From: Podarcis melisellensis
Taxonomy: Eukaryota
Length of the DNA stretch: 64,000 nucleotides
NCBI GenBank assembly: GCA_964234715.1
Contig: OZ174278.1
Reading direction: 5' to 3' (one strand)
How positions within the stretch are numbered: position 1 is the first letter of the stretch; each line of letters starts with the position of its first letter. The notes under the pieces are model-generated. The model was not told the DNA's origin and searched no databases. It saw only the letters and a program-made list of their open reading frames with translations. Below, piece after piece: positions 8,205 to 60,933 of this stretch. A program made the position numbers and the translations under genes.

Positions 8205-9038
8205 CAGACCCTCCAAGCGTCCTTATTTTCCAAGGACTTTCCTGATTTAGAGAAGCCATCCCAGTTTCTGATTTGATCCTGGAATGTCCCACTTTTCCTT
8301 AGGATATCCCTATTTTCAATGGAGAAATGTTGGAGGGTATGGAGTTATCTGACCCCAAGCCATCTGAAGGCAGTCATGTATAGGGAAGGTTGTTTTAATG
8401 TTAAATGTTTTATTATCTTTTTATATACCGTATTTTTCGCCCCATAGGACGCACCGGCCCATAGGACGCACCACTTTTTTGGGGGGGAAATAAAGAAGAA
8501 AATTTTTATTCCCCCCCAGGCGCTTGCGGGGCTGGCAGCGGGGAGAAGCGCTCTTCTCCCCGCCGCCCGCCTGCAGACCAGGTCCGGGGACAGCGGGAAG
8601 ACGCGCTGCGCCTCCCTGCTGTCCCCGGAGCTTGCGGGGCTGGCGGCGGGGAGAAGCACGCGTCTCCCCGCCGTCAGCCTCCAAACCACATCGGGAGACA
8701 GTGGGATGGCGGCGTTCCGCCTCCCGCTGTCCCCGACCTTGTGGGGCTGGTGCTGTGGCTCTCCTGAAGCCTGGAGAGTGAGAGGGGTCGGTGCGCATCG
8801 ACCCCTCTTGCTCTCCAAGCTTCAGCGAAAGCCTGCATTCGCCCCATAGGACGCACATACATTTCCCCTTCATTTTTGGAGGGGAAAAAGTGTGTCCTAC
8901 AGGGCGAAAAATACGGTACATTGGAAGCTGCCTGGAGTGGCTGGAGCAATCCAGTAAGATGTGTGGGGTATAAATAGTAAAATTATTATTATGGAGTAGG
9001 ATGCCCCTATTTTCATCAGAGAAAAGTTGGAAGGTATG
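8205..9038. mobile_element. Composite non-autonomous DNA transposon (CA(G/T)ACC(C/T)TCCAA termini, 6-bp TSD) containing an L2-like tail and a nested MITE
   Basis: Left TIR CAGACCCTCCAA at 8205; right TIRs ending at 8341 and 9038; CAGTTT on both flanks (8199-8204, 9039-9044). Confidence 0.75.
8428..8916. mobile_element. Mariner-type non-autonomous element (TIR CCGTATTTTTCGCCC, TA TSD)
   Basis: TA|CCGTATTTTTCGCCCCATAGGAC...GTCCTACAGGGCGAAAAATACGG|TA; GC-rich internal repeats. Confidence 0.9.
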
Positions 9039-9398: not shown

Positions 9399-12278
9399 TT
9401 AGACTGGAAGCGAAAGGAAAGTCCAATGCTGTAAAGAAAAATATTGCATAGGAACCTGGAATGTAAGAACCATGAACCTGGGTAAGTTGGAGGTGGTCAA
9501 AAATGAGATGGCAAGAATAAATATTGACATCCTGGGCATCAGTGAACTAAAATGGACGGGAATGGGTGAATTCAGTTCGGATGACCATCATATCTACTAC
9601 TGTGGGCAAGAAACCCGTAAAAGAAATGGAGTGGCCCTCATAGTCAACAAAAGAGTGGCGAAAGCTGTACTGGGATGCAATCTCAAAAATGATAGAATGA
9701 TCTCGATACGAATCCAAGGCAGACCTTTTAACATCACAGTAATCCAAGTTTATGCACCAACTACTTGTGCTGAAGAAACTGAAATTGACCAATTCTATGA
9801 AGACTTACAAGACCTTATAGAAGTGACACCAAAGAAGGATGTTCTTCTCATTATAGGGGATTGGAATGCTAAAGTAGGGAGTCAAGAGATAAAAGGAACA
9901 ACTGGCAAGTTTGGCCTTGGAGATCAAAACGAAGCAGGGCAAAGGCTAATAGAGTTCTGTCAAGAAAACAAGCTGGTCATCACAAACACGCTTTTCCAAC
10001 AACACAAGAGACGACTCTACACATGGACATCACCAGATGGGCAGCATCAAAATCAGATTGATTATATTCTCTGCAGCCAAAGATGGAGAAGCTCTATACA
10101 GTCAGCAAAAACAAGACCTGGAGCTGACTGTGGCTCAGATCATCAGCTTCTTATAGCAAAATTCAAGCTTAAACTGAAGAAAGTAGGAAAAACCACTGGG
10201 CCGGTAAGATACAATCTAAGTCAAATCCCTTATGAATACACAGTGGAAGTGAGGAACAGGTTTAAGGATTTAGATTTGGTGGACAGAATGCCTGAAGAAC
10301 TATGGATGGAGGCTCGTAACATTATACAGGAGGCAGCAACGAAAACCATCCCAATGAAAAGGAAATGCAAGAAAGCAAAGTGGCTGTCCAATGAGGCCTT
10401 ACAAATAGCGGGGGAGAGAAGGCAAGCAAAATGCGAGGGAGATGGTGAAAGATACAGGAAATTGAATGCAGATTTCCAAAGAATAGCAAGGAGAGACAAG
10501 AAGACCTTCTTAAACGAGCAATGCAAAGAAATAGAGGAAAGCAATAGAATGGGAAGAACCAGAGATCTGTTCAAGAAAATTGGAGATACGAAAGGAACTT
10601 TTCGTACAAAGATTTCCATAATAAAGGACAAAAGTGGAAAGGACCTAACAGAAGCAGAAGACATCAAGAAGAGGTGGCAAGAATACACAGAGGAATTATA
10701 CCAGAAAGAAATGGATGTCTCGTATACCCCAGGTCGTGTGGTTGCTGACCTTGAGCCAGACATCCTGGAAAGTGAAGTCAAATGGGCCTTAGAAAGCACT
10801 GCAAATAACAAGGCCAGTGGAAGTGATGGTATTCCAGCTGAACTATTTAAAATTTTAAAAGATGATGCTGTTAAGGTGCTACACTCAATATGCCAGCAAG
10901 TTTGGAAAACTCAGCAGTGGCCAGAAGATTGGAGAAGATCAGTCTACATCCCAATCCCAAAGAAGGGCAGTGCCAAGGAATGCTCCAACTACCGCACAAT
11001 TGCACTCATTTCACACGCTAGCAAGGTTATGCTTAAAATTCTACAAGGAAGGCTCAAGCAGTATGTGGACCGAGAACTCCCAGAAGTGCAAGCTGGATTT
11101 AGAAGAGGCAGAGGAACCAGAGACCAAATTGCAAACATGCGCTGGATTATGGAGAAAGCTAGAGAGTTCCAGAAAGACATCTACTTCTGCTTCATTGACT
11201 ATGCAAAAGCCTTTGACTGTGTCGACCACGGCAAACTATGGCAAGTTCTTAAAGAAATGGGAGTGCCTGATCACCTCATCTGTCTCCTGAGAAATCTCTA
11301 TGTGGGACAAGAAGCTACAGTTAGAACTGGATATGGAACAACTGATTGGTTCAAAATTGGGAAAGGAGTACGACAAGGCTGTATTTTGTCTCCCTGCTTA
11401 TTTAACTTATATGCAGAATTCATCATGCGAAAGGCTGGGCTGGATGAATCCCTAGCTGGAATTAAGATTGCCGGAAGAAATATCAACAACCTCAGATATG
11501 CAGATGACACAACCTTGATGGCAGAAAGTGAGGAGGAATTAAAGAACCTTTTAATGAGGGTGAAAGAGGAGAGCGCAAAATATGGTCTGAAGCTCAACAT
11601 CAAAAAAACGAAGATCATGGCCACTGGTCCCATCACCTCCTGGCAAATAGAAGGGGAAGAAATGGAGGTAGTGAGAGATTTTACTTTCTTGGGCTCAATG
11701 ATCACTGCAGATGGTGACAGCAGCCACGAAATTAAAAGACGCCTGCTTCTTGGGAGAAGGGCAATGACAGGCCTAGACAGCATCTTGAGAAGTAGAGACA
11801 TCACCTTGCCAACAAAGGTTCGTATAGTTAAAGCTATGGTTTTCCCAGTAGTAATGTATGGAAGTGAGAGCTGGACCATAAAGAAGGCTGATCGCCGAAG
11901 AATTGATGCTTTTGAATTATGGTGCTGGAGGAGACTCTTGAGAGTCCCATGGACTGCAAGAAGATCAAACCTCTCCATACTGAAGGAAATCAACCCTGAG
12001 TGCTCACTGGAAGGGCAGATTGTGAAGCTGAGGCTCCAGTACTTTGGCCACCTCATGAGAAGAGAAGACTCCCTGGAGAAGACCCTGATGTTGGGAAAGA
12101 TGGAGGGCACAAGGAGAAGGGGACGGCAGAGGACAAGATGGTTGGATAGTGTTCTCGAAGCTACCAGCATGAGTTTGACCAAACTGCGGGAGGCAGTGGA
12201 GGACAGAGGTGCCTGGCGTTCTCTGGTCCATGGGGTCACGAAGAGTCGGACACGACTAAACGACTAAACAACAACAAC
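9399..12278 (+). mobile_element. Bov-B (RTE clade) LINE, near full length, 5'-truncated
   Basis: Single EN+RT ORF, very short 3' UTR with (CAA)n tail, 11-bp TSD AGACTGGTTTT at 9388-9398 and 12279-12289. Confidence 0.97.
9472..12267 (+). CDS. Bov-B LINE ORF: APE endonuclease plus reverse transcriptase (931 aa from the first Met; frame open from 9403)
   Basis: Motifs DILGISE, VIQVYAPT, IIGDWNAK, IDYIL, SDH (EN); QAGFR, FIDYAKAFD, GVRQGCILSP, LRYADD (RT). No stops or frameshifts. Confidence 0.96.
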   Translation: MNLGKLEVVKNEMARINIDILGISELKWTGMGEFSSDDHHIYYCGQETRKRNGVALIVNKRVAKAVLGCNLKNDRMISIRIQGRPFNITVIQVYAPTTCAEETEIDQFYEDLQDLIEVTPKKDVLLIIGDWNAKVGSQEIKGTTGKFGLGDQNEAGQRLIEFCQENKLVITNTLFQQHKRRLYTWTSPDGQHQNQIDYILCSQRWRSSIQSAKTRPGADCGSDHQLLIAKFKLKLKKVGKTTGPVRYNLSQIPYEYTVEVRNRFKDLDLVDRMPEELWMEARNIIQEAATKTIPMKRKCKKAKWLSNEALQIAGERRQAKCEGDGERYRKLNADFQRIARRDKKTFLNEQCKEIEESNRMGRTRDLFKKIGDTKGTFRTKISIIKDKSGKDLTEAEDIKKRWQEYTEELYQKEMDVSYTPGRVVADLEPDILESEVKWALESTANNKASGSDGIPAELFKILKDDAVKVLHSICQQVWKTQQWPEDWRRSVYIPIPKKGSAKECSNYRTIALISHASKVMLKILQGRLKQYVDRELPEVQAGFRRGRGTRDQIANMRWIMEKAREFQKDIYFCFIDYAKAFDCVDHGKLWQVLKEMGVPDHLICLLRNLYVGQEATVRTGYGTTDWFKIGKGVRQGCILSPCLFNLYAEFIMRKAGLDESLAGIKIAGRNINNLRYADDTTLMAESEEELKNLLMRVKEESAKYGLKLNIKKTKIMATGPITSWQIEGEEMEVVRDFTFLGSMITADGDSSHEIKRRLLLGRRAMTGLDSILRSRDITLPTKVRIVKAMVFPVVMYGSESWTIKKADRRRIDAFELWCWRRLLRVPWTARRSNLSILKEINPECSLEGQIVKLRLQYFGHLMRREDSLEKTLMLGKMEGTRRRGRQRTRWLDSVLEATSMSLTKLREAVEDRGAWRSLVHGVTKSRTRLND

Positions 12279-15422: not shown

Positions 15423-16361
15423 GCGAATTTTTCGCTCTATAGGACGCACTTTTCCCCCTCCCAAAATGAAGGGGAAATGTATGTGCGTCCTATGGAGCGA
15501 ATGCAGGCTTTCGCTGAAGCCTGGAGAGCGAGAGGGGTCGATGCGCACCAACCCCTCTCGCTCTCAGGCTTCAGGAAGCTATCCGCAAGCCTTTGGAGCG
15601 CAGCGGGAGTGCCCACGGGCTCCCAAGGCTTGCAGACAGCAGCCTGCAGCCCGAAACCCAGGGAGTGCAGGGGAGCGCACCCCGGGCTTTGGGCAGATGT
15701 CTGCAAGCCTTCGGAGCGCAGCGGGAGTTCCCGCCGGGCTCCCAAGGCTTGCAGATGGCAGCCTGCGGCTTTTCAGGGAGGTGGGGGAATTTCCCCACCA
15801 CCTAGAAAAGCCAATAGAAGCCGCGCAGCCCCTTTAAAGAGCGCACGGTTTTTGCGGGCTTTTCAGGGAGGTGGAGGAATTCCCCCATCTCCTAGAAAAG
15901 CCAGTAGAAGCCGTGCAGCCCCTTTAAAGAGCGTGCGGCTTCTGCGGGAGGTGGAGAATACTCCCAGAGCTTGTCGGGGCTGGTGGGGGAAGCCCGGGCT
16001 TCCGCCGCCAGCCTCGATAAAGCTCCTGAGCAGTTCTGGGGTAGCCCGTGAAGCCTCCGCAGGGCAGCAGCGAGCCTTCATTCCGCTGCCCTGCGGAGGC
16101 GCTCTTGGGGGCTTTTACCCTAGGAGGGAGAAGGGCAGCTCATCACTGACTGGCTGCCCTTCTCCCTCTTCGGAGGAAAAGCCCCCAAGAGCCACACACA
16201 CGCTCCACTCATCTCATGAGAGGGAGAGCTGAGCAGAGCCTGGGATGCATACAGGCTCTGCTCAGCGCTCCCTTTAAATAATATTTTTTTCTTGAATTCC
16301 CCCCCCCTAAAAATTAGGTGCACCCTATAGTCCAGTGCGCCCTATGGAGTGAAAAATACGG
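15423..16361. mobile_element. Second, longer copy of the CCGTATTTTTCG family in opposite orientation
   Basis: Degenerate left TIR, right end GAAAAATACGG|TA; the first ~150 nt are the reverse complement of 8760-8916; the internal repeats differ. Confidence 0.9.
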
Positions 16362-26388: not shown

Positions 26389-26513
26389 TCAGCATGCAGT
26401 TTGTGGCAATTCTATTGAAGAGACAGGGTAGTATGTACAGTAACAATGCTTTGCTGTCCTCATCGAGGCCTCTTGACATTCCATCCCATTCCTGTTGGCT
26501 ATTTCAGGATTAT
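26389..26513 (-). CDS. MBNL2: MBNL2 terminal coding exon, read in two frames
   Basis: cttctaacag|ATAATCCTGAAATAG... Phase-1 entry gives DNPEIANRNGMECQEASMRTAKHCYCTYYPVSSIELPQTAC* (TGA 26389-26391). Phase-0 entry, after the 95-nt exon, gives IILK* (TAG 26499-26501). Both are known MBNL2 C-terminus types. Confidence 0.95.
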
Positions 26514-41347: not shown

Positions 41348-41535
41348 NNNNNNNNNNNNNNNNNNNNNNNNNNNNNNNNNNNNNNNNNNNNNNNNNNNNN
41401 NNNNNNNNNNNNNNNNNNNNNNNNNNNNNNNNNNNNNNNNNNNNNNNNNNNNNNNNNNNNNNNNNNNNNNNNNNNNNNNNNNNNNNNNNNNNNNNNNNNN
41501 NNNNNNNNNNNNNNNNNNNNNNNNNNNNNNNNNNN
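41348..41535. other. N-gap (188 nt) at the expected position of the MBNL2 95-nt cassette exon
   Basis: Run of N downstream of the 36-nt exon, preceded on the sense strand by a 164-nt AG-free, YGCY-rich stretch. I did not find the 95-nt exon elsewhere. Confidence 0.8.
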
Positions 41536-41699
41536 AATGAACAGGAGTGTGTAGCATTATGGCAATGGCAGTGGAATTTTGGCATGGTGAATATCAGAGC
41601 AGCAGCAGCAAGCCATCATGGGTTAAACCAGCAGATGGCATGCAATCACAATGCAAAGCAAGAGAGCGTGGCAGAGAAATAAAACAAAAGGGAAAATAG
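41536..41699 (-). promoter_or_regulatory. Intronic splicing-regulatory region: YGCY (MBNL) cluster, UGCAUG (RBFOX), AG-exclusion zone
   Basis: About 13 YGCY tetramers including TGCTGCTGCTGCT, one TGCATG, a TTTAAC branch-point-like motif and no AG dinucleotide on the sense strand. Confidence 0.75.
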
Positions 41700-42820
41700 C
41701 TTATTACAGGTACAATTTAAAGGAAGAATGTCACAGTTATCAACGATTCCCAGAAAAGAATTATTAATTCGTTGTTTTGGTATTTTTTTTAATTTAATAA
41801 TGCTTTCATGAAAATGGCCAGTTCGTTTATGGAAAAGCTGGAGTGGTTTTCCCCTAAAATAACAAAGGTATCCTAGTAGGGGTTCTCTGTCAAAGTTTAA
41901 AAGCCAAGGATGATATCCAGTGACGTCAGCTCCCAGACGTCCCCCTCCTACCCTCTTCTCTTCAGTGCCTGCCCCCCCAGTGCTCCCCAAATCTGCTCTG
42001 GAAGGTTATGAACCCTCATGAGCAGATAGAGGGTACAGGGGGGTGGCAGGGAGTGGGGTCCCATCACACTCATTAGGCATCACCCCAAATATGACAGAAC
42101 TACTGGTATTTGGAATTCATTTATTTTTTAAAAAAACAAACAAACCTAGTTTTCTAAAAATCCCAATTGTCTGGCTCTGAAGGTGCTCCTGAGCAGGCAG
42201 CAGACACCTCTATCTGCAGAATGAAGGTTATTCCCCGGTTCCTGCCTAAGGCTGTGCCAGAAGAGTCCCTAACCCTCCAGTGGGACTTTTCTGGAGGAGT
42301 TCAGGAGGGATGCATTAAGAACGAAGGTGCGGAAAAGCTCCATTTCCTCAAATTTCTCAAACCCTCTGCCTAGCAAACTTTCCTGTCACTGTCCTAGAAA
42401 TTACAATCCTAGAAACTTAATTTTGGGCCGATCTGCTCTCACCTTCTGCCTGCCTGCACGCATGTGACAATGTTCTGACACCTGCTTCTTGTCATCTTTA
42501 CCAAAACCTGCTCTTATATTTGAGCAGCTGGTACTAAAATCCTTAGGCAAGCCTGTGATCATATGACTCTTAAACTACTAGATTCACCTTCGTGTCCATT
42601 TCTGTCACCTCTTCCCACTTCCCATACACACTTGAGAGGAAGCCCCAAAGAATATAGTGGAACATATTGCTCCTAACTGCATATAGGATGGTGGTCCCTG
42701 AAGTAACCCTCCGTCATTTTCTGTTGCCACCTCTGTCCCCCAATATCTGGTTCAGGAGCAATACTGGTCATGTGGGTCTTGCTCAACTTCTGTTCGCATC
42801 AGTTTTGTCCTGCAGCCTTT

Positions 42821-43107
42821 TCTGCTTTATTGGCCAAGGGAGCTGGCGTACAGCTTCCGGGTCATGTGGCCAGCATGACTAAGCCACTTCTGGCGAACCA
42901 GAGCAGCACACGGAAACACCGTTTACCTTCCTGCCGGAGCGGTATCTATTTATCTACTTGCACTTTGATGTACTTTTGAACTGCTAGGTTGGCAGGAGCA
43001 GGGACCGAGCAATGCGAGCTCACCCCGTCACGGGGATTCAAACCGCCGACCTTCTGATCGGCAAGTCCTAGGCTCAGTGGTTTAACCCACAGTGCCACCC
43101 GTGTCCC
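42821..43107 (-). mobile_element. Sauria SINE lacking its 3' tail
   Basis: Close match to about 33100-33386; the ACCTTT tail is absent. Confidence 0.9.
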
Positions 43108-44975
43108 AATATTTCTTTAGGGTACTGCAAAAATGCACACACAATGTGCAAAGTCTTACTTTCCGGGGCTTCCTAACACACTTCCTCGCCTATTTCTACT
43201 TCAGGTCCTGGCAGGGTCCTCTAGCTGTCAACGTTTCCCTTTTTCGAAGGGAAATTCCCTTATTCTGAATAGGATTCCTCGCAAGAAAAGGGGAAAGTTG
43301 ACAGCTATGCCTCTAGCTGCCTTATTCTCTCATTCCTCAAACATTCTTCACCTCCCCTCTTTTAAGTCCCTCAAAACACCTTCCTTGCACTTAACTACAT
43401 CCTTCCATCCATCTATATAAAGTCAGGGTTTGGATGATTTAATCTTATTATAGAGACACGCAATTTAGCTACATGAAAGATGCAGCCCTGCAACCCACTA
43501 GCAGCATATGCATGGACAGCTGCTTATGCAGAAAACTGGCAATCACTGGCCATAGATTGAGACTAATATAAAACTTGAGGTTTAGCAAACGGAATGAGTT
43601 TATACTATCACGCCGAAATAGGAGAGCAACGTGCTTTATTTCCTTCTGAAATGGGAAAGGTTCAATTATGAAAATGAAATAAACTTAATTCTGGTTTCTT
43701 ATGTTCTTATATCAAGCTTACATGTTTTGTCTTTTGAAAAGACAAGTGATACTCATTCACTCCTTTAGATGTATCCTATTGCTTTTTATGACTCTCGGAC
43801 GAAATCTGATTTATTTCACTGTCTGTAACCATTTTCTGAGGGAGCTATCCTACATGAGAAGCTGGCATAAAGGACGTTGGTGCGAGTTAAGCTGTTCAGC
43901 AGCTAAGCCAACCTTAACAGGGCAAAGGGGAAACAGGCCTTTAAAATGGGGTTTCAGATACACCACCTTTTTTGTTAGCTTAATTTATGCTGGGTTGTCC
44001 AGTCCCACGACTGAGCTGGACAGGGCTTAGGATTTAGTCTAACTGCCCCCTCCCTGGTCCTGCCTCCAGAACTCCTCTTGTTCAAAGCTTTCACCAGCTT
44101 CAGATCCAGCTGAGACCTGGCTGAGTCAAGGATGAGGGAATTAGGCTGGCACAGTTCAGCTGGAGATCCACTGGATCCCAACCCGCTCATCCTGGCAGAT
44201 CTTGCTATAAGATTTAGCTAGTATATTATTTGATCCTGAGGAGGAAAGCAGTTATTCTGGTAATTTATTTTGGTTTAGTTTTATAGATAAATTGATCTCT
44301 TATCATAGCATATAGCAGAAGTTTGATTTCAAATGAGTGGTTCAAAGGCAAGGGTCGTAATGAATATTCAGTATTAACTTGGGGAAAGTCTGCTGGGCAA
44401 ACTCTAATTTTATTTTTTTAAACCAGAAAGTGAAAACTTTTCAAATGTTTCAACTCTTGTCAGATATATTTTCAAAAACGGAAAATATTCTTTAGGTCTA
44501 AATATTTTTCTCTACTTTTTACTGCAAGTATTAAAATTTGGATTTCTGGGAAACACTGATAAAACTTTCTCACAACACAGCAAAAAGAAGAAACAGGCAC
44601 ACCACTATGAAACTTTAGAACACTAATGAAATTAGACTGCTGTTTCAATATCTTATGGTTTAATAATGCTAGCAATATTAAATATAGAAAAAGTTTTTTT
44701 CTTTCTTTTGAAAACAGAAAAGCAGCTTGAAATTCATGGTGTTTGTGCTTTTTGCAGTGGGATTGTTATAGCAAGTGATGTTGCATCTAAGCAGCAGGGT
44801 TTTTTGTTTCATTTTTAAAAAACAATTAAGTTGAAAAATTTAACTGTTCAAGCAGAAGTCCAAATGGATCATCAGATTGAGTCAATTGTCTAAGTTATGT
44901 TTCAGTTCCTCAAAACAAAGGAAACTACAGAATACGATTAAAAAAAAGAGATCAATAAAGAAGTTTGAAACCTAC

Positions 44976-45011
44976 CAATACTGGTAGCGGGTGTCATGCA
45001 CAAAACTGACC
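44976..45011 (-). CDS. MBNL2: MBNL2 36-nt alternative cassette exon
   Basis: cccag|GGTCAGTTTTGTGCATGACACCCGCTACCAGTATTG|gtaggt. Encodes GSVLCMTPATSI, the known 36-nt MBNL cassette; phase 1/1. Confidence 0.95.
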
Positions 45012-45434
45012 CTGGGTGTCATGCAATGATAGGTGGAAAAAGTGAATAAAGGGAAGAAACAGGTTAGCTGTTTAGAGTTAACATTCAAAGTGAGATCCAA
45101 GCATCCCCAAGATAAGCCAAAGTTAGTTAAATACAATTTCAAAGAGATCATTCATAGCTTCTTTGCTGTTTTAAAACAGTTCTTCTTATAGTCACTCAAC
45201 ACATTGTGCACATTAATCAAAATCCATATGGCAAAGCCTTTCTTTAGCATTTCCTTTCAGCAACGGGAACTAGCTCTTTAAAAAGCAATCACTTTGAATA
45301 GTCTAGGTTATCCCGCAATGGTCTGTATCACAATCTACAACTCGCAGCTGTTTTAAGCCCCCAAAATGTGCTACTACCAAGATAAACAAGATTACTTCAG
45401 AGCCAATATAGTTAATACTGCAGCCATGACAGAC

Positions 45435-45925
45435 AGGAAATCTGTGCAGACAACACTTGGGAGTAAGTCCCATTGGACTCAGTGGGACTTCCTTCCAAAT
45501 TTGTACAGCACTGAGCTGCCCTCCATCATTTAAACAATTTGCTTTATGCACAGGTAAGATAAATCAGGGTGTTTTTTTTCTGCGTTTCACATTCAAAGAT
45601 AGTTTTTAGCTTGCAATGCCATGCCAACCATGCCTACTCAGAAGGAAGCCCTATTAAATTTAATGGGACTTACTCCCAGGTAAGTGGGGTTAGGACTGCA
45701 GCCTAACAGTGCAATTGTATAAATGTCTTCTCAAAACAAGATTGCACTGAGTTCAGCGGGACCTACTCCCAGCTATAGGATTGCAACCTTAAAGTATTAA
45801 TACTCTACATTAACAAGGCTATTAAGTCTGCTTCACATTATACTCCTAAATACACTTACTAGAGAGTAAGTCCCACTGAACACAACGGAATACACTTCCG
45901 AGTAAACATGCACAGGACTGTACTG
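45435..45925. repeat. Cluster of about four old palindromic MITE-like units (PIF/Harbinger-like)
   Basis: Repeated GAGTAAGTCCCA-loop-TGGGACTTACTC hairpin core with TGCAAT..GGATTGCA ends and TAA/TTA junctions. Confidence 0.65.
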
Positions 45926-46673
45926 TTAGTATGGGTGGGTTTCATTTCTGACCTGATGCAGTGCCTGGCGTACCATTATATATTTTGTATATTCTTTTGC
46001 ATCTTTGCAATAACTCAGTGTTCCCTGGGGCCCTCATAGTTAGGAGAAAACAGGCAGATTGGGGGGGAGGAGGATCTGTATATGTAAAATGTTTTGAAAT
46101 CCCAGCACGTCCTGCAGTTCTATATACATTACCTACAGCTAGCTAGCTAGCTATGAATGACCTTGCCTTGAAGGAACAACCTCCAGTGAATAATTCAATA
46201 TTTCTATTATCATGCTCAATTAAAACCCCCCAAAGAAACTAGTATTTGAGGAAAAATCCTGCTGTTCCTTTGCAGATCATAAAGCAAACCAGGCACCGAA
46301 TTACCAGATGACTATGCTAAAGGCATAATAACTTTACCTATAGCCCACAATCTATTTACTTTAATTCTTCTTACTGTGGAAGAATCAATGAGATGACTCT
46401 AGCATTTGTGGGCAGTGAATGGCAGCAGTAGTGGATCGTGCTATATGCAATATTGAAAAATGGAGACTGGAGCTACTCCGTATTTTTCACATGGCTTGGT
46501 TTAAAAAACAACAACCACAACCTCATATGTATTTTCCCACATTCCCCCCCCCCAAAAAAAGAGGTTTTAGGAGTAAAAATTCCCGTTTTCACATGGGACT
46601 GATATACAAATGTTAACTGGTGTTGTGTTTCTCTAGGTGTCCCTAGAGGCAAGCTCCTTCACATTATTTAGAT

Positions 46674-47044
46674 CAGGGCAGCCCATTGTGCAGCCTAAGG
46701 GCTTGAGGCCTTTTTTGGTGGCCCTCAGCAATATTTCATGCCGTCCTGCTGTCTTCCCAAAGTGGGGCGCTGGGCTCCAGGAAGGAGGCATGAGGGCTCT
46801 GGTGGGACCCTGGAGTCCTCCTGTCTCCTTCCCAAATCCTAGTTAGTGTTTTCCCAGCTTTGGGAAGGAGCTGGAAGGCTTCAGGGCCTGACCAGAGCCT
46901 CACACCTCCTTGCCAAAGCCTGATGCCTTGCTCAGCCAGCCTTGAGAAAGCTGGGGATGGTCAAATTTGGGCCTCACCTCCCCTGCAACAAGGCAGGTTC
47001 ATTGTTGAAGTACCCCACTTGGTATGAAATGTTGGACCACCCTG
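46674..47044. mobile_element. Old hAT non-autonomous element
   Basis: CAGGG...CCCTG termini; TSD ATTT(A/G)GAT. Confidence 0.65.
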
Positions 47045-47394
47045 ATTTGGATCACTGTAAAGGAGGCATTCTGCTCAATAAATGAGAGGTATGGAAAGGT
47101 AAGCCATAGCATTTAAGGAAACCCCTGTCAGATTCAACAGAAAAGTGGCTATTGGAAGAGTATTGTTGAGGTGTGTGAGCCCCAATCACAGCTCGATGGG
47201 CGTGTAGTAGGTCAAGCTGAAGCTGTTCACTGCCTCTTCAGAGAAGAAAACCTCAGGCATTGCTCCTCTCCCCTCTTGGCATCAGTGCTCACCTGCTGCC
47301 TACAACCCGCTCCTTGCAGGAGCAGCCATGTTCTACTGATTGCAGTCTTCCCCAGGGATGAACAACACATGCACAGATAATGCCAGGATTGCAT

Positions 47395-47562
47395 AAAGCT
47401 AAAATCCACTTAGTGGGAAGATGTGAATGAGCACCGAAGAAAGCTGACCATGGTTTCTGTGTCTTCTTAAATTTGAAGAAGTGTGCATGCACACGAAAGC
47501 TCATACCAAGAACTGACTTAGTTGGTCTTTAAGGTGCTACTGGAAGGAATTTTTTTTGTTCT
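47395..47562 (+). mobile_element. Penelope-like element terminal fragment with hammerhead ribozyme relic
   Basis: TTGAAGA-A-GTGTGCATGCACAC-GAAAGCTCATACC...TTAGTTGGTCTTTAAGGTGCTACT; a related fragment lies on the minus strand at about 420-475. Confidence 0.75.
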
Positions 47563-50500
47563 TAAATTTTGTTTGCAAATGCAGAAAGCGACTTCTCTGT
47601 ACTCCCCTCACTGAAAGGCTGCTGAAATGAGTCTGTGCAAGGGATGCATCTCTTTTAATACACTCCTGTTTTCCTTGTGTTAGCAGCAGCAGACTTGCAG
47701 CCTTCTTACACCATGTGAGTATCAACTCTCTCATGGCATCTAACCCCTAATGGAAGCTTTGGGAGAGGAGAAATGCCTGTACTGCCCCTTTTCCCTCTCT
47801 TTGGCACATCACAAGACTGGCTCCAGGTTGTACCAGACACAAGCACTTCTCTCAATTGACACTTACACTGACAGGCAATGACTGGTGATTCCCCTTAGCT
47901 GGGAACGAAGTACAGGCCACATCTACATCTGAATTTCCAAGTCACTACATACTGGAATGCCAAAAGGGGTAAGTTCTGCAGAGACATATTAAAAGATCTT
48001 CCAGTCCAATTGTCTTTATGGACATCTACACTAGTGTTTCAGGTTGATAGTTTTTTGTTAGGTGTCACTACATTTTCCTACCTCTTTTCATAACGGAAAC
48101 AAATGGCAAAATAATTTGTTATTGATCTTTTGTGGAAAGCTGCAGAAAATGGGTGTTTTCAAAGTTCATATAGTTTACTGGGCAAGATACCTCTGCACTG
48201 CAAACAAACTCAAATACAAAAATGTGCTGTAATGAAGGATGCTATTCATGCAACTACTCTTTAGATCTGCGCCATTTTGTAAATGCAGCTGCTGGAAACA
48301 CCAGGCAAAGGAGAACATCTTTAGCTCCTTCACAGGTGTAATTCTTATTCCTGACTGCCCTCTAAGTAAAATAACATAAGGCAACAAAATATTTTCAAAA
48401 TGTAGAAAGCAACCTTTTCCAACAAAGAAGAATGAATAATCCTGAAAATGTTTTAGCAATAAATTGGTACTGTAGCTGCCTGGGCACTATGAAATTTTCT
48501 TTTTCAGGTGTAATACTGAACCACAGTTTAGTGCTAGATTCACCAGCAGCAGCAGCAGCAAGCCTCGGGCTCTACACTCTCCCCTTCTCTAGTGAACCGT
48601 GAGGAGAAGACTGGAAGCTTTGCCTTCTCTTTGCAGTCAAAACTGGGAGGGAACGCTGATTGGTTTAACCTGTAGTTTGTTCCAACAAGCCAGGATCAAA
48701 CTGTGGTTCGTGCTCCTATCTTGCTTGAACAAACCATAGTTTGATCTAACCAAAGTCCCCAAAGTCCGGATGCAATCAAAAGCTCTGGTTTAAAACAGAA
48801 AGCAAAAGCTTCTAATCTACTCCCCTCTTTGTGCTTGCAGGAAGAACAAAGGGAAGGCAGGACTCCTCTAACCCAAGCTGTTCACCCACACAGTCATACT
48901 GTTTGGGACTCTGACGGGCCACAGGTTCCTCATGCCTAGTTTAGCATTATGTCTGAACTAGGCCAAAGTTGGAGATCCCATAAGCATTGTTTTCTTTATA
49001 ACAGCTTCTTCTAAAGTTAAAAAGTATGTTTCGGAGGCATGCACATGCAAATCATAGCAGTAACAAAATTCATGATATTCAAAAGACTGATAAGCATACC
49101 CACCTGTAATTCAGGCACAGGTATGTTAAGCTGCAGCTGGGATGCTCAGCCTAATTTACAGTTTTTGTTATGAGAGTGAAATGCAACAATAATGTAGCTT
49201 TAAGCACCATAAAAATTAACAGAGCTTGTATGTGCACGACAGCATCACACCCAAGCTGACATAAGATTTTTCACTCTTTGTTTTTAATTATAGTTTGTAA
49301 AGTATTGGCCCATTTCAGACTTAACACCAAACACTAAACCATAGTTTAGCGTGATGTGAGCCTCACACTCACAAGCTCCTCCTCCCTTCTTTTGTGAGGA
49401 AATGATTGGAAGTTTGTGAGTCCCATTGTAAACTAACTGGAGTTTATCATTACATCTAAACTGGGGTTGTCCAAATTCTATATCGTTAATAAGGCAGGAC
49501 CATAAACCTTACTTTTCTATAGTCAAAGCTTGCATTTCTTTTGAACTCTTTAATGTATGTGCATTTATTTAACTGCACAGTGAAAACCTTCCAAAATTAT
49601 ACTAGGGGTTACATGTGGGTGGTCATTTTAAATTACTTCAAAACAATCACTCATCCATGTCTATCAATTAAATAGTGATACTGATGTTTGCCCAGGCACT
49701 GTAAACACTACAAACTTCAGAATCAAGCGTTGATTCTGTCCCTGAGAAACTATCATATCTAGTTGTGCAGTGATCCTTCTTTCCGAGAAAGAAAATATAT
49801 CCCTGCACTATTATCTGAAATTATAGATGGTGCTTGCCAGGGCTAATGCAACATGCTGAAAGATCTTCCATTTCATTTTCCGTGACTAAGTTATCTATAG
49901 CTAAGCACACTGAAGATCTCAGCAGCTACTTTGGTGACTAGGGGTTTTTCGAGTCGCGGAGGTAGCCGCTGCAATCTTTTACACATCTCTGCATCCGGTG
50001 TCATACTGCTCATGCGAGTAGACCACTCATGTGAGCAGTTAATTACAGTAATCTACCAGCTGCAATAACATGTGCATTGGCTTCAGCGTTCAAAGTGGCA
50101 AGGAAACTCTTATCTTACTAGGATTCCATTACCGATTAGAATAGCCCTCTTCAAGATTTCACACCGCACCACTAACTCTTGTTTAAGGGGGCAGAGCAGA
50201 GCCACACTCATGGGTCCTGCCTTGCCACGAGCCCCCGTTGTCCATGTACTGAGGAGGGAACACCTTGGGAAGGCAGCCTGATTGCAGAGGGAGCCCAGGA
50301 ACATACAGCAGGTTGCCCTCTCCAGCAGATGTCCACCAAAGCATGGACAGCAGGGAAAGTAGAAAATTCTCAGGAAGCCCTGTTCTCTGCCACTGCCTGA
50401 TCCCACCTGTTGCCTTTGGGTAACTGTACACAGAACACATGCTCTCCTTGCCCATGCGAATTAGCTGCAGAAAGGTATCGTCACTTTGGTTTTTTATAGC

Positions 50501-51165
50501 AGTAGCGGAAGGAGTCTGAATATTAGCAAGCAGGTTGATGTTAAGTAGGAATTTCATTCTGCTTGAGAAATGTACAGGTAAGCCATGCAAGATATACTTG
50601 AAGGACAGAGGAAGTTAATTGCAAGTACTTAACAGACTCCTAGTGAAACTGAATGCCTACTTTGTCCCTCAAGGCTCTTCTCATCAGTTCCCAAAACACC
50701 CTGTGCAAAGAGGTGTATTGCAGAACGTGCTTCAAGCTGACAGAAAACAATGGAGATGAGAACAGACTGTGTTCCATCCCAATGGGTTGTTGTGACACAT
50801 ATGAAGAAAGACCAAAAATAAGCAGTCCTGTAGATTGTTCATATTCAGTGTATTGGGTCCAGGCCTAGTCACCCTTAGATCAGACCCACTAAAATCTCCA
50901 TGGGGCTCGTGGATTTCAATGGGTCTGTTCTAAGAATGAGGGGTCTGGATCCAACCCAAAGCCTTTTGACCACACTGACATGTTTCTGAAATCCTAATGC
51001 TCTTCAGAAGTAAAATATAACCCCACGTAATATTTTTTGGGTCACAAAAGAGGTTAGAAAGTGATGGATTTGTCCAAGGGAAAGCACAATGAATGTGATC
51101 ACAAAGAAAGTGATCTCTGCTGCGGAGATTTAAAGAAACAAAACTAAACTCTCAAAATGACCTAC

Positions 51166-51319
51166 CTGTTGGAATAAACGCTGCATGTTGCTGCAACTGT
51201 GCACTAGCAAGAGCCTGTTGGTAGTGCAAGAAACTGGGATTAAAAACAGCACTGGCCCCATTGCTTTTCTCAAGGGCTTGCCTCTTTGGTAAAGTGTGAA
51301 GAACACCAGGAGGAAAGGC
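51166..51319 (-). CDS. MBNL2: MBNL2 coding exon, 154 nt
   Basis: ttgcag|GCC...ACAG|gtaggt. Translates [51 protein letters not shown] plus one base (phase 0/1). Confidence 0.96.
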
Positions 51320-51912
51320 CTGCAAATGGAATAATAAGAGTAGCAGTAGTAAGGTTGACAGAAGCTGTAATAGGTTGTTCTGCTCTTAAAATATTACATT
51401 TGGTTGAAGATGCCTTGCCATGCACATTAGTTCAAAACAGGAACAATGTCAAATGGATGGCATTTTTTTTGTTATTGATAGTAAATGCATGGCACAATTA
51501 AACTAAAATTATAGCACCACAACAATTAAACTGAAACAAAAACAGAAAAAAAGCTTCTCAAGACTGAAGGGGTTTTTAAAGAAATCCAAAGATCTTTCTT
51601 TAAATATGGCTAAAAATAGAAGAAGGAAAACAGCACTTGTCTTTCATAACATTTTTAAAAAGTTAAATATCTTTGCACCGTTAACTATATTAATTAGCAT
51701 AGAAGAAGCATCTTCAATTACAAAAGCAGGATTTAAAAAAAGCTTTTAAGGGAATATAGTTGAAGATGAAACTGTGTTAGGAAAGGCGGAAAGTTGCTTT
51801 GCAATCACTACATGTGGAAATGAAATGGCTAAAATACTGAAATTATTTTTGTAAAATTAATAATACAAGAAAATTCAGTTAACATTAAAAATTATTTTGC
51901 ATCTCGGAAAAG

Positions 51913-52205
51913 NNNNNNNNNNNNNNNNNNNNNNNNNNNNNNNNNNNNNNNNNNNNNNNNNNNNNNNNNNNNNNNNNNNNNNNNNNNNNNNNNNNNNNNN
52001 NNNNNNNNNNNNNNNNNNNNNNNNNNNNNNNNNNNNNNNNNNNNNNNNNNNNNNNNNNNNNNNNNNNNNNNNNNNNNNNNNNNNNNNNNNNNNNNNNNNN
52101 NNNNNNNNNNNNNNNNNNNNNNNNNNNNNNNNNNNNNNNNNNNNNNNNNNNNNNNNNNNNNNNNNNNNNNNNNNNNNNNNNNNNNNNNNNNNNNNNNNNN
52201 NNNNA
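51913..52205. other. N-gap (293 nt) at the expected position of the MBNL2 54-nt cassette exon
   Basis: Run of N between the 264-nt and 154-nt exons. I did not find the 54-nt exon (TQSTAKAMKRPLEATVDL-like) in the readable part of this intron. Confidence 0.75.
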
Positions 52206-55721: not shown

Positions 55722-55985
55722 CATCACTGTAGCAGCTGCAGCGGCTGCCTGAGCTGCCACTGCAGCCTGGTTGGCTTGGTGCTGAGCAGCTTTGATTTTG
55801 GCCTGCAAGTGAGCAGGAGGGTGAAAATATTTGCATTTCTCCCTCATGCAGCGCCCCTTTATGTAATCCATACAAACAGTTACGGTGTTGTCATTTGTAT
55901 CAATCATTGTGCTGTCTGCAGGATGTGCAAAGCGGCAGTCAGTTTCGCCCCGTGCACAGTTTCCTCGCTGGAACTCCCTGCAAAC
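55722..55985 (-). CDS. MBNL2: MBNL2 coding exon, 264 nt (CCCH zinc fingers 3 and 4, Ala-rich tract)
   Basis: accag|GTT...ATG|gtaagt. Translates [22 protein letters not shown]...[52 protein letters not shown] (ORF 55695..56015). Confidence 0.98.
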
Positions 55986-57429: not shown

Positions 57430-57630
57430 CTCTAGCTTATCGGTCCTGAGGAGTTTCTGGGTCGTGGTTGAACCAGGGACTGAGACAGGGGGGCTTCCAG
57501 GAACAATGACAGGCTGCGTGGGGACAATTTCAGTAGGAACTAATCCAACCCCAGGAGTGACGGGTGTTAAATATGGTGCAAAGCTAAGTGCTGTGTTGGA
57601 TCCTATTGTTGGCCCTACAGGAAATGAGTG
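57430..57630 (-). CDS. MBNL2: MBNL2 coding exon, 201 nt (Pro-rich linker)
   Basis: cctcag|CAC...GAG|gtatgg. Translates [67 protein letters not shown]; lies inside ORF 57421..57738; phase 0/0. Confidence 0.97.
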
Positions 57631-57645
57631 CTGAGGAAAGGGAGG

Positions 57646-57650
<5 letters not shown>

Positions 57651-57706
<56 letters not shown>
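57651..57706. repeat. (AG)28 microsatellite forming the polypyrimidine tract of the 201-nt exon
   Basis: Direct reading; ends 20 nt before the exon start on the sense strand. Confidence 0.97.
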
Positions 57707-57710
<4 letters not shown>

Positions 57711-59103: not shown

Positions 59104-60240
59104 CAGTGGTGCCCCGCAAGACGAATGCCTCGCAAGACGAAAAACCCGCAAGACGAAAGGGTTTTTCGGTTTTTGCGACGCTTCGCTAGACGATTTTCCC
59201 TATGGGCTTGCATCGCAAGACGAAAGCCCATAGGGAAATCTCGGGGACCTCTTTTAAATGCTGGCGGTGGGGAGCAAAGCCTTTTCCCCCCCTTCGGACT
59301 TCAGAAGAGGTCCAGGAAGGCCGGCGGGGGCGAAAGGCTTTGCTCCCCACCGCCAGCATTTTAAAAGCGGTCCGGGATAGCAGGGAAGCGCTTCCCGCTA
59401 TCCCGGACGGCTTTTGAAGGCAGGCGGGGGGGGGGAGCAAAGACTTTTGCCCCCCGCCAGCCTTCAGAAGAGGTCCAGGACCTCTTCTGAAGGCTGGCGG
59501 GGGGCAAAAGTCTTTGCTCCCCCCTGCCTGCCTTTCCGGGAAAGCGGAAAAGGCAGCGCTGCCTTCCCGCTCTCCCGGAAAGGCAGGCAGGGGGGAGCAA
59601 AGACTTTTGTCCCCCGCCCGCCTTCGGAAGAAGTCCAGGACCTCTTCCGAAGGCTGGCGGGGGGCAAAAGTCTTTGCCCCCCTGCCTGCCTAACCGGGGG
59701 CTTTTAAATCGCCCCGGGACTGTCCGGGGCGATTTAAAAGCGCCCGGACGGCTTTGGGGGGGAGCAACGACTTTTGCCCCCCGCCAGCCTTCAGAAGAGG
59801 TCCAGGACCTCTTTCGAAGGCGGGGGGGGGGGCAAAAGTCTTTGTCCCCCTGCCTGCCTTCCCGGGGGCTTTTAAATCGCCCCGGGACAGCGGAGAATTC
59901 CTCCGCTGTCCCTGGGCGATTTTAAAATGCTGGCGGGCGGCAGCAAAGGCTTCGCTGCCGCCCGCCAGCATTTTAAGATCGCCCCGGGACAGCAGAAAAG
60001 TCTCCGCTGTCCCGGGAAGGCAGGCGGGGGGGGGGGAGCAAAGACTTTCGCCCCCCGCCAGCCTTCAGAAGAGGTTGGAGGACAGACTGTCCCCAGACCT
60101 GGTCTGAAGGCGGTTTCCATAGGAACGCATTAATTGATTTTTAATCCATTCCTATGGGAAACCGTGCTTCGCAAGACGAAAAACTCGCAAGACGAAAAGA
60201 CTTGCGGAACGAATTAATTTCGTCTTGCGAGGCACCACTG
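59104..60240. mobile_element. Tc1/mariner non-autonomous element filled with a GC-rich palindromic minisatellite
   Basis: TA|CAGTGGTGCCCCGCAAGACGAA...TTCGTCTTGCGAGGCACCACTG|TA; internal head-to-head repeat units. Confidence 0.93.
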
Positions 60241-60768: not shown

Positions 60769-60933
60769 CATTGGCTGAAGAGGCGTTCCTGGAAACATAA
60801 ATTGCATCTGCTGTGCAAGCATTGCTGCTGCAGTTTTCTGTTGGATCAGGTTGTTCCTTCCATTAATTTCTAGCTGCGTTTTCAAATGTGTTGGTGGGTG
60901 AAGATATTTGCAGTTCTCCCTTGTGCAACGGCT
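60769..60933 (-). CDS. MBNL2: MBNL2 coding exon, 165 nt (end of CCCH zinc finger 2 and linker)
   Basis: ttttcag|AGC...ATG|gtaagt. Translates [55 protein letters not shown], which matches recalled vertebrate MBNL2 ([30 protein letters not shown]). Confidence 0.97.

What the first reader, a model, noticed from the sequence alone, without database searches (positions are those of the whole stretch)
41348..52205. Both N-gaps fall on the two missing, highly conserved MBNL2 cassette exons
Seen: all expected exons are readable except the 54-nt and 95-nt cassettes. The only two gaps in 64 kb (51913-52205, 293 nt; 41348-41535, 188 nt) lie in the correct introns, have non-round sizes and non-repetitive flanks, and one is preceded by a 164-nt AG-free zone. 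Established: these exons and their flanks are very strongly conserved in MBNL genes, and the 54-nt exon contributes the nuclear-localisation signal. Inference: these are not ordinary assembly gaps but real sequence that was hard-masked, plausibly because near-identity to human or other vertebrate DNA tripped a contamination filter. If so, the assembly systematically deletes ultraconserved elements and would give false exon-loss calls; small odd-sized gaps would then map ultraconserved elements.
Basis: partly seen in the sequence, partly recalled or inferred. Interest (0 to 1): 0.7.

Follow-up and report, generated by a model that had tools for sequence, protein, structure and literature searches.

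The report
Masked conserved exons in lizard MBNL2
The only two runs of N in this window sit where the two deeply conserved alternative exons of an otherwise complete MBNL2 gene should be.

Summary
The window has exactly two N runs, 41348-41535 (188 nt) and 51913-52204 (292 nt, not 293).

The gene is an MBNL2-type muscleblind gene on the minus strand. Every coding exon within the window's span is readable with AG/GT borders, except the 54-nt and 95-nt cassettes. Each N run lies in the intron that should hold one of them. The flanking exons stay in frame when the cassettes are skipped. The last exon carries a second short reading frame that only a 3n+2 exon (95 nt) can open.

Neither cassette is found in the readable introns. 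A 164-nt AG-free zone abuts the upstream edge of run A and holds the densest YGCY cluster of the window.

The flanks are unique. Repeats elsewhere in the window are read through. Both run lengths are 4 mod 8.

Best reading: real sequence was replaced by N on purpose because it is near-identical to human DNA. I did not read or fill the hidden letters.

First readers noted the same pattern on other pieces of this genome. One earlier follow-up on another piece reached the same reading.

The biology is already known, so interest is low.

The parts
51913..52204 (.). N run B, 292 nt. It lies in the intron between the ZnF3/4 exon and exon 6, 3,517 nt below the upstream donor and 593 nt above the next acceptor. 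Inferred to cover the 54-nt cassette and its conserved intronic flanks.
   Evidence: The 54-nt exon is absent from the readable intron. Published ultraconserved element around the equivalent MBNL1 exon, also present in MBNL2 (PMC7901844).
41348..41535 (.). N run A, 188 nt. It lies in the intron between the 36-nt exon and the last coding exon, 3,440 nt below the upstream donor and 14,834 nt above the last acceptor. Inferred to cover the 95-nt cassette.
   Evidence: No matching 95-nt candidate in the readable intron. The reading-frame logic of the last exon requires a 3n+2 exon here.
41536..41699 (-). 164-nt AG-free, pyrimidine-rich zone that abuts the upstream edge of N run A on the gene strand. 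It holds 13 YGCY motifs, including a short CUG-like run. Inferred to be an AG-exclusion zone and MBNL-binding silencer in front of the hidden 95-nt exon's acceptor.
   Evidence: second-longest AG-free run of 4,833; the only place in the window with 13 or more YGCY per 164 nt (window mean 2.2, sd 1.8).
60769..60933 (-). Coding exon with the second half of zinc finger 2 and the start of the linker (165 nt).
   Evidence: Pfam zf-CCCH_10, E 2.9e-14. PDB matches to muscleblind-like ZnF1/2 structures (MBNL1 and MBNL2).
57430..57630 (-). Linker exon (201 nt). A (TC)n tract on the gene strand lies just upstream of its acceptor.
55722..55985 (-). Exon with zinc fingers 3 and 4 (264 nt). It ends in phase 0 with a GTAAGT donor.
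   Evidence: Pfam zf-CCCH_10, E 1.4e-27. Best solved structure is 2e5s_A at 172.5 bits, above MBNL1 ZnF3/4 at 152.8 bits. 168 muscleblind-type hits in the word search.
51166..51319 (-). Exon 6 (154 nt). It starts in phase 0, so it joins the ZnF3/4 exon in frame when the 54-nt cassette is skipped. It carries a short basic motif that I judge, from my own knowledge, to correspond to the conserved exon-6 KRAEK motif, which the review makes the second half of the bipartite nuclear signal.
   Evidence: PMC13044900.
44976..45011 (-). 36-nt exon, ending in phase 1.
26389..26513 (-). Coding part of the last exon, with two nested reading frames. After skipping, it reads a 41-residue tail ending at a stop at 26391-26389. 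After a 95-nt insertion, it reads four residues and a stop right at the exon start.

Best explanation
The window carries the 3' two thirds of an ordinary MBNL2-type muscleblind gene of a non-mammalian amniote. An earlier follow-up on the same genome calls it a lizard.

The gene's two regulated cassette exons are the 54-nt exon, which supplies half of the nuclear-localisation signal, and the 95-nt exon, which switches the C-terminal reading frame. Both are present in the real genome but are hidden under the two N runs.

The runs are not unread DNA. They are masks written over real sequence because those stretches, the exons plus their regulatory intron flanks, are near-identical to human DNA. 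The mask was most likely applied during this scan's own data preparation.

Shown here:
- the positions and sizes of the runs
- the complete, in-frame exon set around them
- the absence of the cassettes from the readable introns
- a splice-regulatory zone running into run A
- unique flanks
- both lengths equal to 4 mod 8

Inferred:
- that the exons lie under the runs
- that the runs replace letters one for one
- which layer applied the mask
For: - There are only two N runs, of 188 and 292 nt.
- All other exons in the span are readable with AG/GT borders and consistent phases. The skip forms are in frame across both runs. The last exon's second frame needs 1+95 = 96 nt.
- No AG..GT open candidate of 54 or 95 nt in the readable introns resembles a cassette, and short peptide probes found none.
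- Random placement would hide both exons with probability 5.5e-6.
- A 164-nt AG-free zone with the window's densest YGCY cluster runs straight into run A. This fits the published MBNL negative feedback on e5 and e8 (PMC13044900).
- The 54-nt exon region of MBNL1 is a 212-nt ultraconserved element that MBNL2 shares (PMC7901844; PMC5082313).
- The flanks are unique and non-overlapping. A 33-unit microsatellite and 108-160-nt tandem arrays elsewhere in the window are read through.
- Both lengths are 4 mod 8 (chance 1/64). The two starts differ by 5 mod 8, so there is no common grid in window coordinates.
- First readers noted quantised N runs at conserved loci on other pieces of the same genome, and one follow-up reached the same reading. 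These are leads, not independent proof.
Against: - No direct look under the runs was allowed, so the presence of the exons there, and the one-for-one length, are inferred.
- I found no paper saying that the 95-nt exon is ultraconserved.
- Two lengths are a small sample for the 4 mod 8 rule, and the other windows' counts are unchecked reader notes, some of them probably off by one or two.
- The scan's program labels the runs as assembly gaps with estimated length.
- The highly conserved ZnF3/4 exon was not masked, so the threshold of any filter is unknown.
Confidence: 0.75

Rival explanations
1. The N runs stand in the public assembly itself, because a contamination screen by the submitter or the archive hard-masked stretches that matched human DNA too well.
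For: It explains the same coincidence with conserved exons, the unique flanks and the odd sizes. Contamination screens that remove or mask foreign-looking spans are in routine use (PMC12548146).
Against: I found no report of such screens masking spans of a few hundred bases inside long vertebrate scaffolds. The layer could not be tested here.
Confidence: 0.12
2. They are genuine assembly gaps with estimated lengths that happen to fall on the two exons. One route would be the removal of human-matching reads before assembly, which starved these spots of coverage.
For: The scan's program labels them as assembly gaps. Estimated gap sizes can take any value.
Against: Pure chance is about 5.5e-6. 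The flanks are unique and repeats elsewhere in the window are assembled through. Both lengths are 4 mod 8. Many first-reader notes (unchecked) report N runs in or near conserved genes or elements on other pieces of the genome.
Confidence: 0.05
3. The cassette exons are truly lost or diverged in this species, and the N runs are unrelated to them.
For: Neither exon is seen in the readable sequence.
Against: The last exon keeps an open four-codon frame and stop that only a 3n+2 insertion can use. A long AG-free, YGCY-dense zone, typical of a regulated acceptor, runs into run A. The 54-nt exon region is ultraconserved in the family.
Confidence: 0.02

Closest known systems
Vertebrate MBNL2 with alternative exons e5 (54 nt) and e8 (95 nt)
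   Same: The exon order, the sizes of the readable exons (including the 36-nt exon), the tandem CCCH fingers, and the frame switch at the C-terminus all match. The cassette positions match the two alternative exons published for MBNL2 (PMC6530876; PMC13044900).
   Different: Nothing biological is seen to differ. The two cassettes themselves cannot be read here. The assignment to paralogue 2 rests on the best PDB match (2e5s_A) and on my own knowledge of the MBNL2 C-terminus, not on a full-length comparison.
Ultraconserved element spanning MBNL1 exon 5, with its upstream YGCY silencer and distant branch point
   Same: It involves the same family and the same exon, and MBNL2 is said to share the element (PMC7901844). 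Run B (292 nt) is of the right order of size to cover a 54-nt exon plus roughly 140 nt of acceptor region and some downstream intron. Run A is preceded by a comparable AG-free YGCY cluster.
   Different: Identity to human was not and may not be measured here. I found no published statement that the 95-nt exon is ultraconserved.
Ordinary scaffold gaps in genome assemblies
   Same: They are written as runs of N inside a longer sequence.
   Different: These runs are not at repeats and not of a conventional fixed size. There are two of them within 10.6 kb in an otherwise gap-free window, both lengths are 4 mod 8, and each sits on a missing conserved exon.

Membership tests
Muscleblind-like (MBNL) gene, paralogue 2 | Tandem CCCH zinc fingers of the muscleblind type | tested here: met
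   The ZnF3/4 exon shows two CCCH patterns and Pfam zf-CCCH_10 at E 1.4e-27. The second half of ZnF2 scores E 2.9e-14. PDB matches are to MBNL structures. ZnF1 lies outside the window.
Muscleblind-like (MBNL) gene, paralogue 2 | Closer to MBNL2 than to MBNL1 or MBNL3 | tested here: inconclusive
   The best solved structure is 2e5s_A at 172.5 bits, against MBNL1 ZnF3/4 at 152.8 bits. The entry's listed name does not say MBNL2; I know it as MBNL2 from memory. The named Gekko MBNL3 fragment is only 81% identical. No full-length comparison was made, because a joined model was not searched.
Muscleblind-like (MBNL) gene, paralogue 2 | Exon plan with a 54-nt in-frame cassette after ZnF3/4 and a 95-nt frame-shifting cassette before the last exon | tested here: inconclusive
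   The phases of the flanking exons and the two nested frames of the last exon fit exactly. The cassettes themselves are under N.
Ultraconserved element (at least 200 nt identical between human, mouse and rat) | Perfect identity to human over at least 200 nt | not testable with these tools
   The only support is the literature on MBNL1/2 exon 5.
   Both runs coincide with the two missing conserved cassettes. The evidence is indirect.
188 and 292 are both 4 mod 8. The sample here is only two runs.
   It would need the unmasked record or reads across the runs.
Ordinary assembly gap | Lies at repeats or low-complexity DNA, or at contig ends, with duplicated or overlapping flanks | tested here: not met
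   The flanks are unique in the window and share no overlap. Repeats elsewhere in the window are read through.

The most novel reading that the evidence does not exclude
The N runs stand in the public assembly record itself. A contamination screen would then have hard-masked genuine ultraconserved DNA in a vertebrate genome, so public annotations of this and similarly processed genomes would carry systematic false losses of ultraconserved exons and enhancers, and short odd-sized N runs would serve as a map of such elements.
Probability: 0.1. Interest if true: 0.45.

Novelty: already known. Interest (0 to 1): 0.08.

Why it matters
The point is practical, not biological.

- In this scan's copy of the genome, short N runs in unique DNA should be read as hidden, deeply conserved sequence, not as missing sequence. 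Calls of exon loss, broken genes or 'unknown' genes next to such runs are unsafe.
- The runs themselves point to ultraconserved places.
- The gene underneath is an ordinary MBNL2 orthologue whose cassette exons, nuclear signal and autoregulation are already described.
- One small biological point may be worth keeping. The reptile gene keeps a long AG-free, YGCY-dense zone in front of the 95-nt exon, which fits the published MBNL feedback on that exon.

Tried and rejected
- **Word search with the ZnF3/4 exon.** It returned 168 muscleblind-type fragments, but none was spliced to the next exon. No tool-derived probe for the cassettes was obtained. Absence from the readable introns therefore rests on an exhaustive AG..GT candidate list and on short peptide probes from my own knowledge of the family.
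- **The big protein search.** Not used. The protein is not open and the claim does not rest on absence of relatives.
- **Joined spliced model.** None was built for any search. Exons were searched apart, by reference.
- **Sequencing runs.** These gave only DNA-type holders kept as contigs.
- **Literature on contamination screens masking conserved DNA.** Nothing usable was found.
- **Earlier findings.** The look-up near this place and the one by gene name were blank.
- **Pfam on five long minus-strand ORFs.** No hits; they are antisense or repeat read-throughs.
- **Rejected readings.** True exon loss, chance coincidence of real gaps, and a false gap from duplicated flanks.
Full report
**Observation.** The window contains exactly two runs of N, at 41348-41535 (188 nt) and 51913-52204 (292 nt) (read directly). 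There is no soft-masking and no other unread base.

**The gene.** A scan of all six frames for CCCH finger patterns found two adjacent fingers on the minus strand at 55982-55821. Open stretches on that strand gave a colinear series of muscleblind-type exons. Their borders were checked base by base, and all have AG acceptors and GT donors:
- second half of finger 2 plus linker start, 60933-60769 (165 nt)
- linker, 57630-57430 (201 nt)
- fingers 3 and 4, 55985-55722 (264 nt)
- exon 6, 51319-51166 (154 nt)
- the 36-nt exon, 45011-44976
- the last coding exon, starting at 26513

Pfam places the finger exons in zf-CCCH_10, at E 1.4e-27 and 2.9e-14. The best solved structure for the ZnF3/4 exon is 2e5s_A at 172.5 bits, above the MBNL1 ZnF3/4 entries at 152.8 bits. 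I know 2e5s as human MBNL2 from memory; the listed name does not say so. The word search returned 168 muscleblind-type fragments, one of them 100% identical. The first coding exon lies upstream of the window. An earlier follow-up on another piece of this genome calls the organism a lizard; I did not check that.

**Continuity and frame across the runs.** The scan's program asks for this test first.
- Exons on both sides of each run lie on the same strand and in the right order.
- The ZnF3/4 exon ends in phase 0 and exon 6 starts in phase 0, so the form that skips the 54-nt exon is in frame across run B.
- The 36-nt exon ends in phase 1. Joined to the last exon, it reads a 41-residue tail to a stop.
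- With 95 further bases (1+95 = 96), the last exon is read in another frame that gives four residues and a stop right at its start. The readable sequence thus itself demands a 3n+2 exon in the intron that holds run A.
- The left and right flanks of each run share no overlap and have no copies elsewhere in the window.
- Whether each run's length equals the number of hidden letters could not be tested.

**Are the cassettes elsewhere?**
- I listed every stretch of exactly 54 nt (phase 0) in the intron 55721-51320, and every stretch of exactly 95 nt (phase 1) in the intron 44975-26514, that is open and bordered by AG and GT. There are 7 and 21 candidates. None resembles a muscleblind cassette, and most lack a pyrimidine tract.
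- Short peptide probes for the 95-nt exon, taken from my own knowledge of the family, found nothing in context.
- The word search gave no spliced fragment that could serve as a tool-derived probe.
Exons were searched apart, by reference.

**Signals beside the runs.**
- On the gene strand, run A is immediately preceded by 164 nt without a single AG. This is the second-longest such run of 4,833 in the window.
- That zone is 68% pyrimidine and holds 13 YGCY motifs. It is the only place in the window to reach that count (mean 2.2, sd 1.8 per 164 nt).
- This is the expected look of an AG-exclusion zone with a distant branch point and an MBNL-binding silencer in front of a regulated acceptor that lies just inside the run.
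- It matches the published picture for MBNL1 exon 5: YGCY clusters in an ultraconserved silencer, with the branch point 141 nt from the acceptor (PMC7901844; PMC5082313).
- It also matches the published MBNL negative feedback on e5 and e8, including Mbnl2 (PMC13044900).
- Run B has only 19 AG-free bases in its readable upstream flank. That is compatible with its whole acceptor region lying under the 292-nt run.

**Gap or mask?** Several points argue for a mask.
- Two runs of these sizes placed at random would hide both exons with probability about 5.5e-6.
- The window is otherwise well assembled. A 33-unit dinucleotide repeat, tandem arrays of 108-160-nt units and a 2.8-kb LINE are all read through. 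The runs themselves sit in unique DNA.
- Both lengths are 4 mod 8 (chance 1/64), while the two starts differ by 5 mod 8. This is what a union of fixed-length words sampled every eight bases on the other genome would give. That mechanism is my inference.
- First readers of other windows of this genome noted the same thing: 'all five N-runs 4 mod 8', 'quantised lengths', and runs in FOXP2, ZNF521 and ARX-region conserved DNA. One follow-up concluded that such runs cover human-like conserved exons.

**What was not done, and why.**
- I looked for sequencing runs with a stretch beside run B.

**Known biology.**
- MBNL2 has two alternative exons, e5 (54 nt) and e8 (95 nt) (PMC6530876).
- e5, together with a short basic motif in e6, forms the bipartite nuclear signal. 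e8 shifts the reading frame. Both are under MBNL feedback (PMC13044900).
- The e5 region of MBNL1 is a 212-nt ultraconserved element that MBNL2 also contains (PMC7901844). MBNL1 and MBNL2 share a paralogous conserved non-coding sequence (PMC3595034).
- I found no paper stating that the 95-nt exon is ultraconserved.

**Verdict.**
- The attribution to the assembly and to a contamination filter is not supported. A deliberate mask in this scan's data is the simpler source.
- The biology underneath is an ordinary, already described gene. Interest is low.
- The practical lesson is to distrust exon-loss and broken-gene calls next to short N runs in this data set.

Noticed in passing
window 9472-12267 (+): An uninterrupted 931-aa ORF with an apurinic-type endonuclease domain and a reverse transcriptase domain. 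This is an apparently intact non-LTR retrotransposon (LINE) ORF2, lying downstream of the last coding exon of the gene and on the opposite strand. The long minus-strand ORFs over the same place (such as 12263-11301) had no Pfam hit and are probably its antisense read-through.
   Followed up: partly
window 57642-57707: A (GA)33 microsatellite, which reads as (TC)n on the gene strand. It ends about a dozen bases upstream of the acceptor of the linker exon (57630), so the exon's polypyrimidine tract is essentially a dinucleotide repeat.
   Followed up: no
window 59430-59866; also 8515-8750 and 15763-15948: G+C-rich tandem arrays with units of 160, 108 and 90 nt give long spurious ORFs in several frames. 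One lies in the intron between the ZnF2 exon and the linker exon. They may be copies of one repeat family.
   Followed up: no
window 41536-41699 (-): Inside the AG-free zone there is a short CUG-like run among 13 YGCY motifs. It is the densest cluster of candidate MBNL sites in the 64 kb, and it suggests that feedback on the 95-nt exon is kept in reptiles.
   Followed up: partly
I draw no conclusion from it and sent its letters nowhere afterwards.
   Followed up: no
window 26499-26513 (-): The last coding exon carries two nested reading frames from its first base: a four-codon frame with a stop, and a 41-codon frame. Together they work as a built-in switch operated by the 95-nt cassette.
   Followed up: yes
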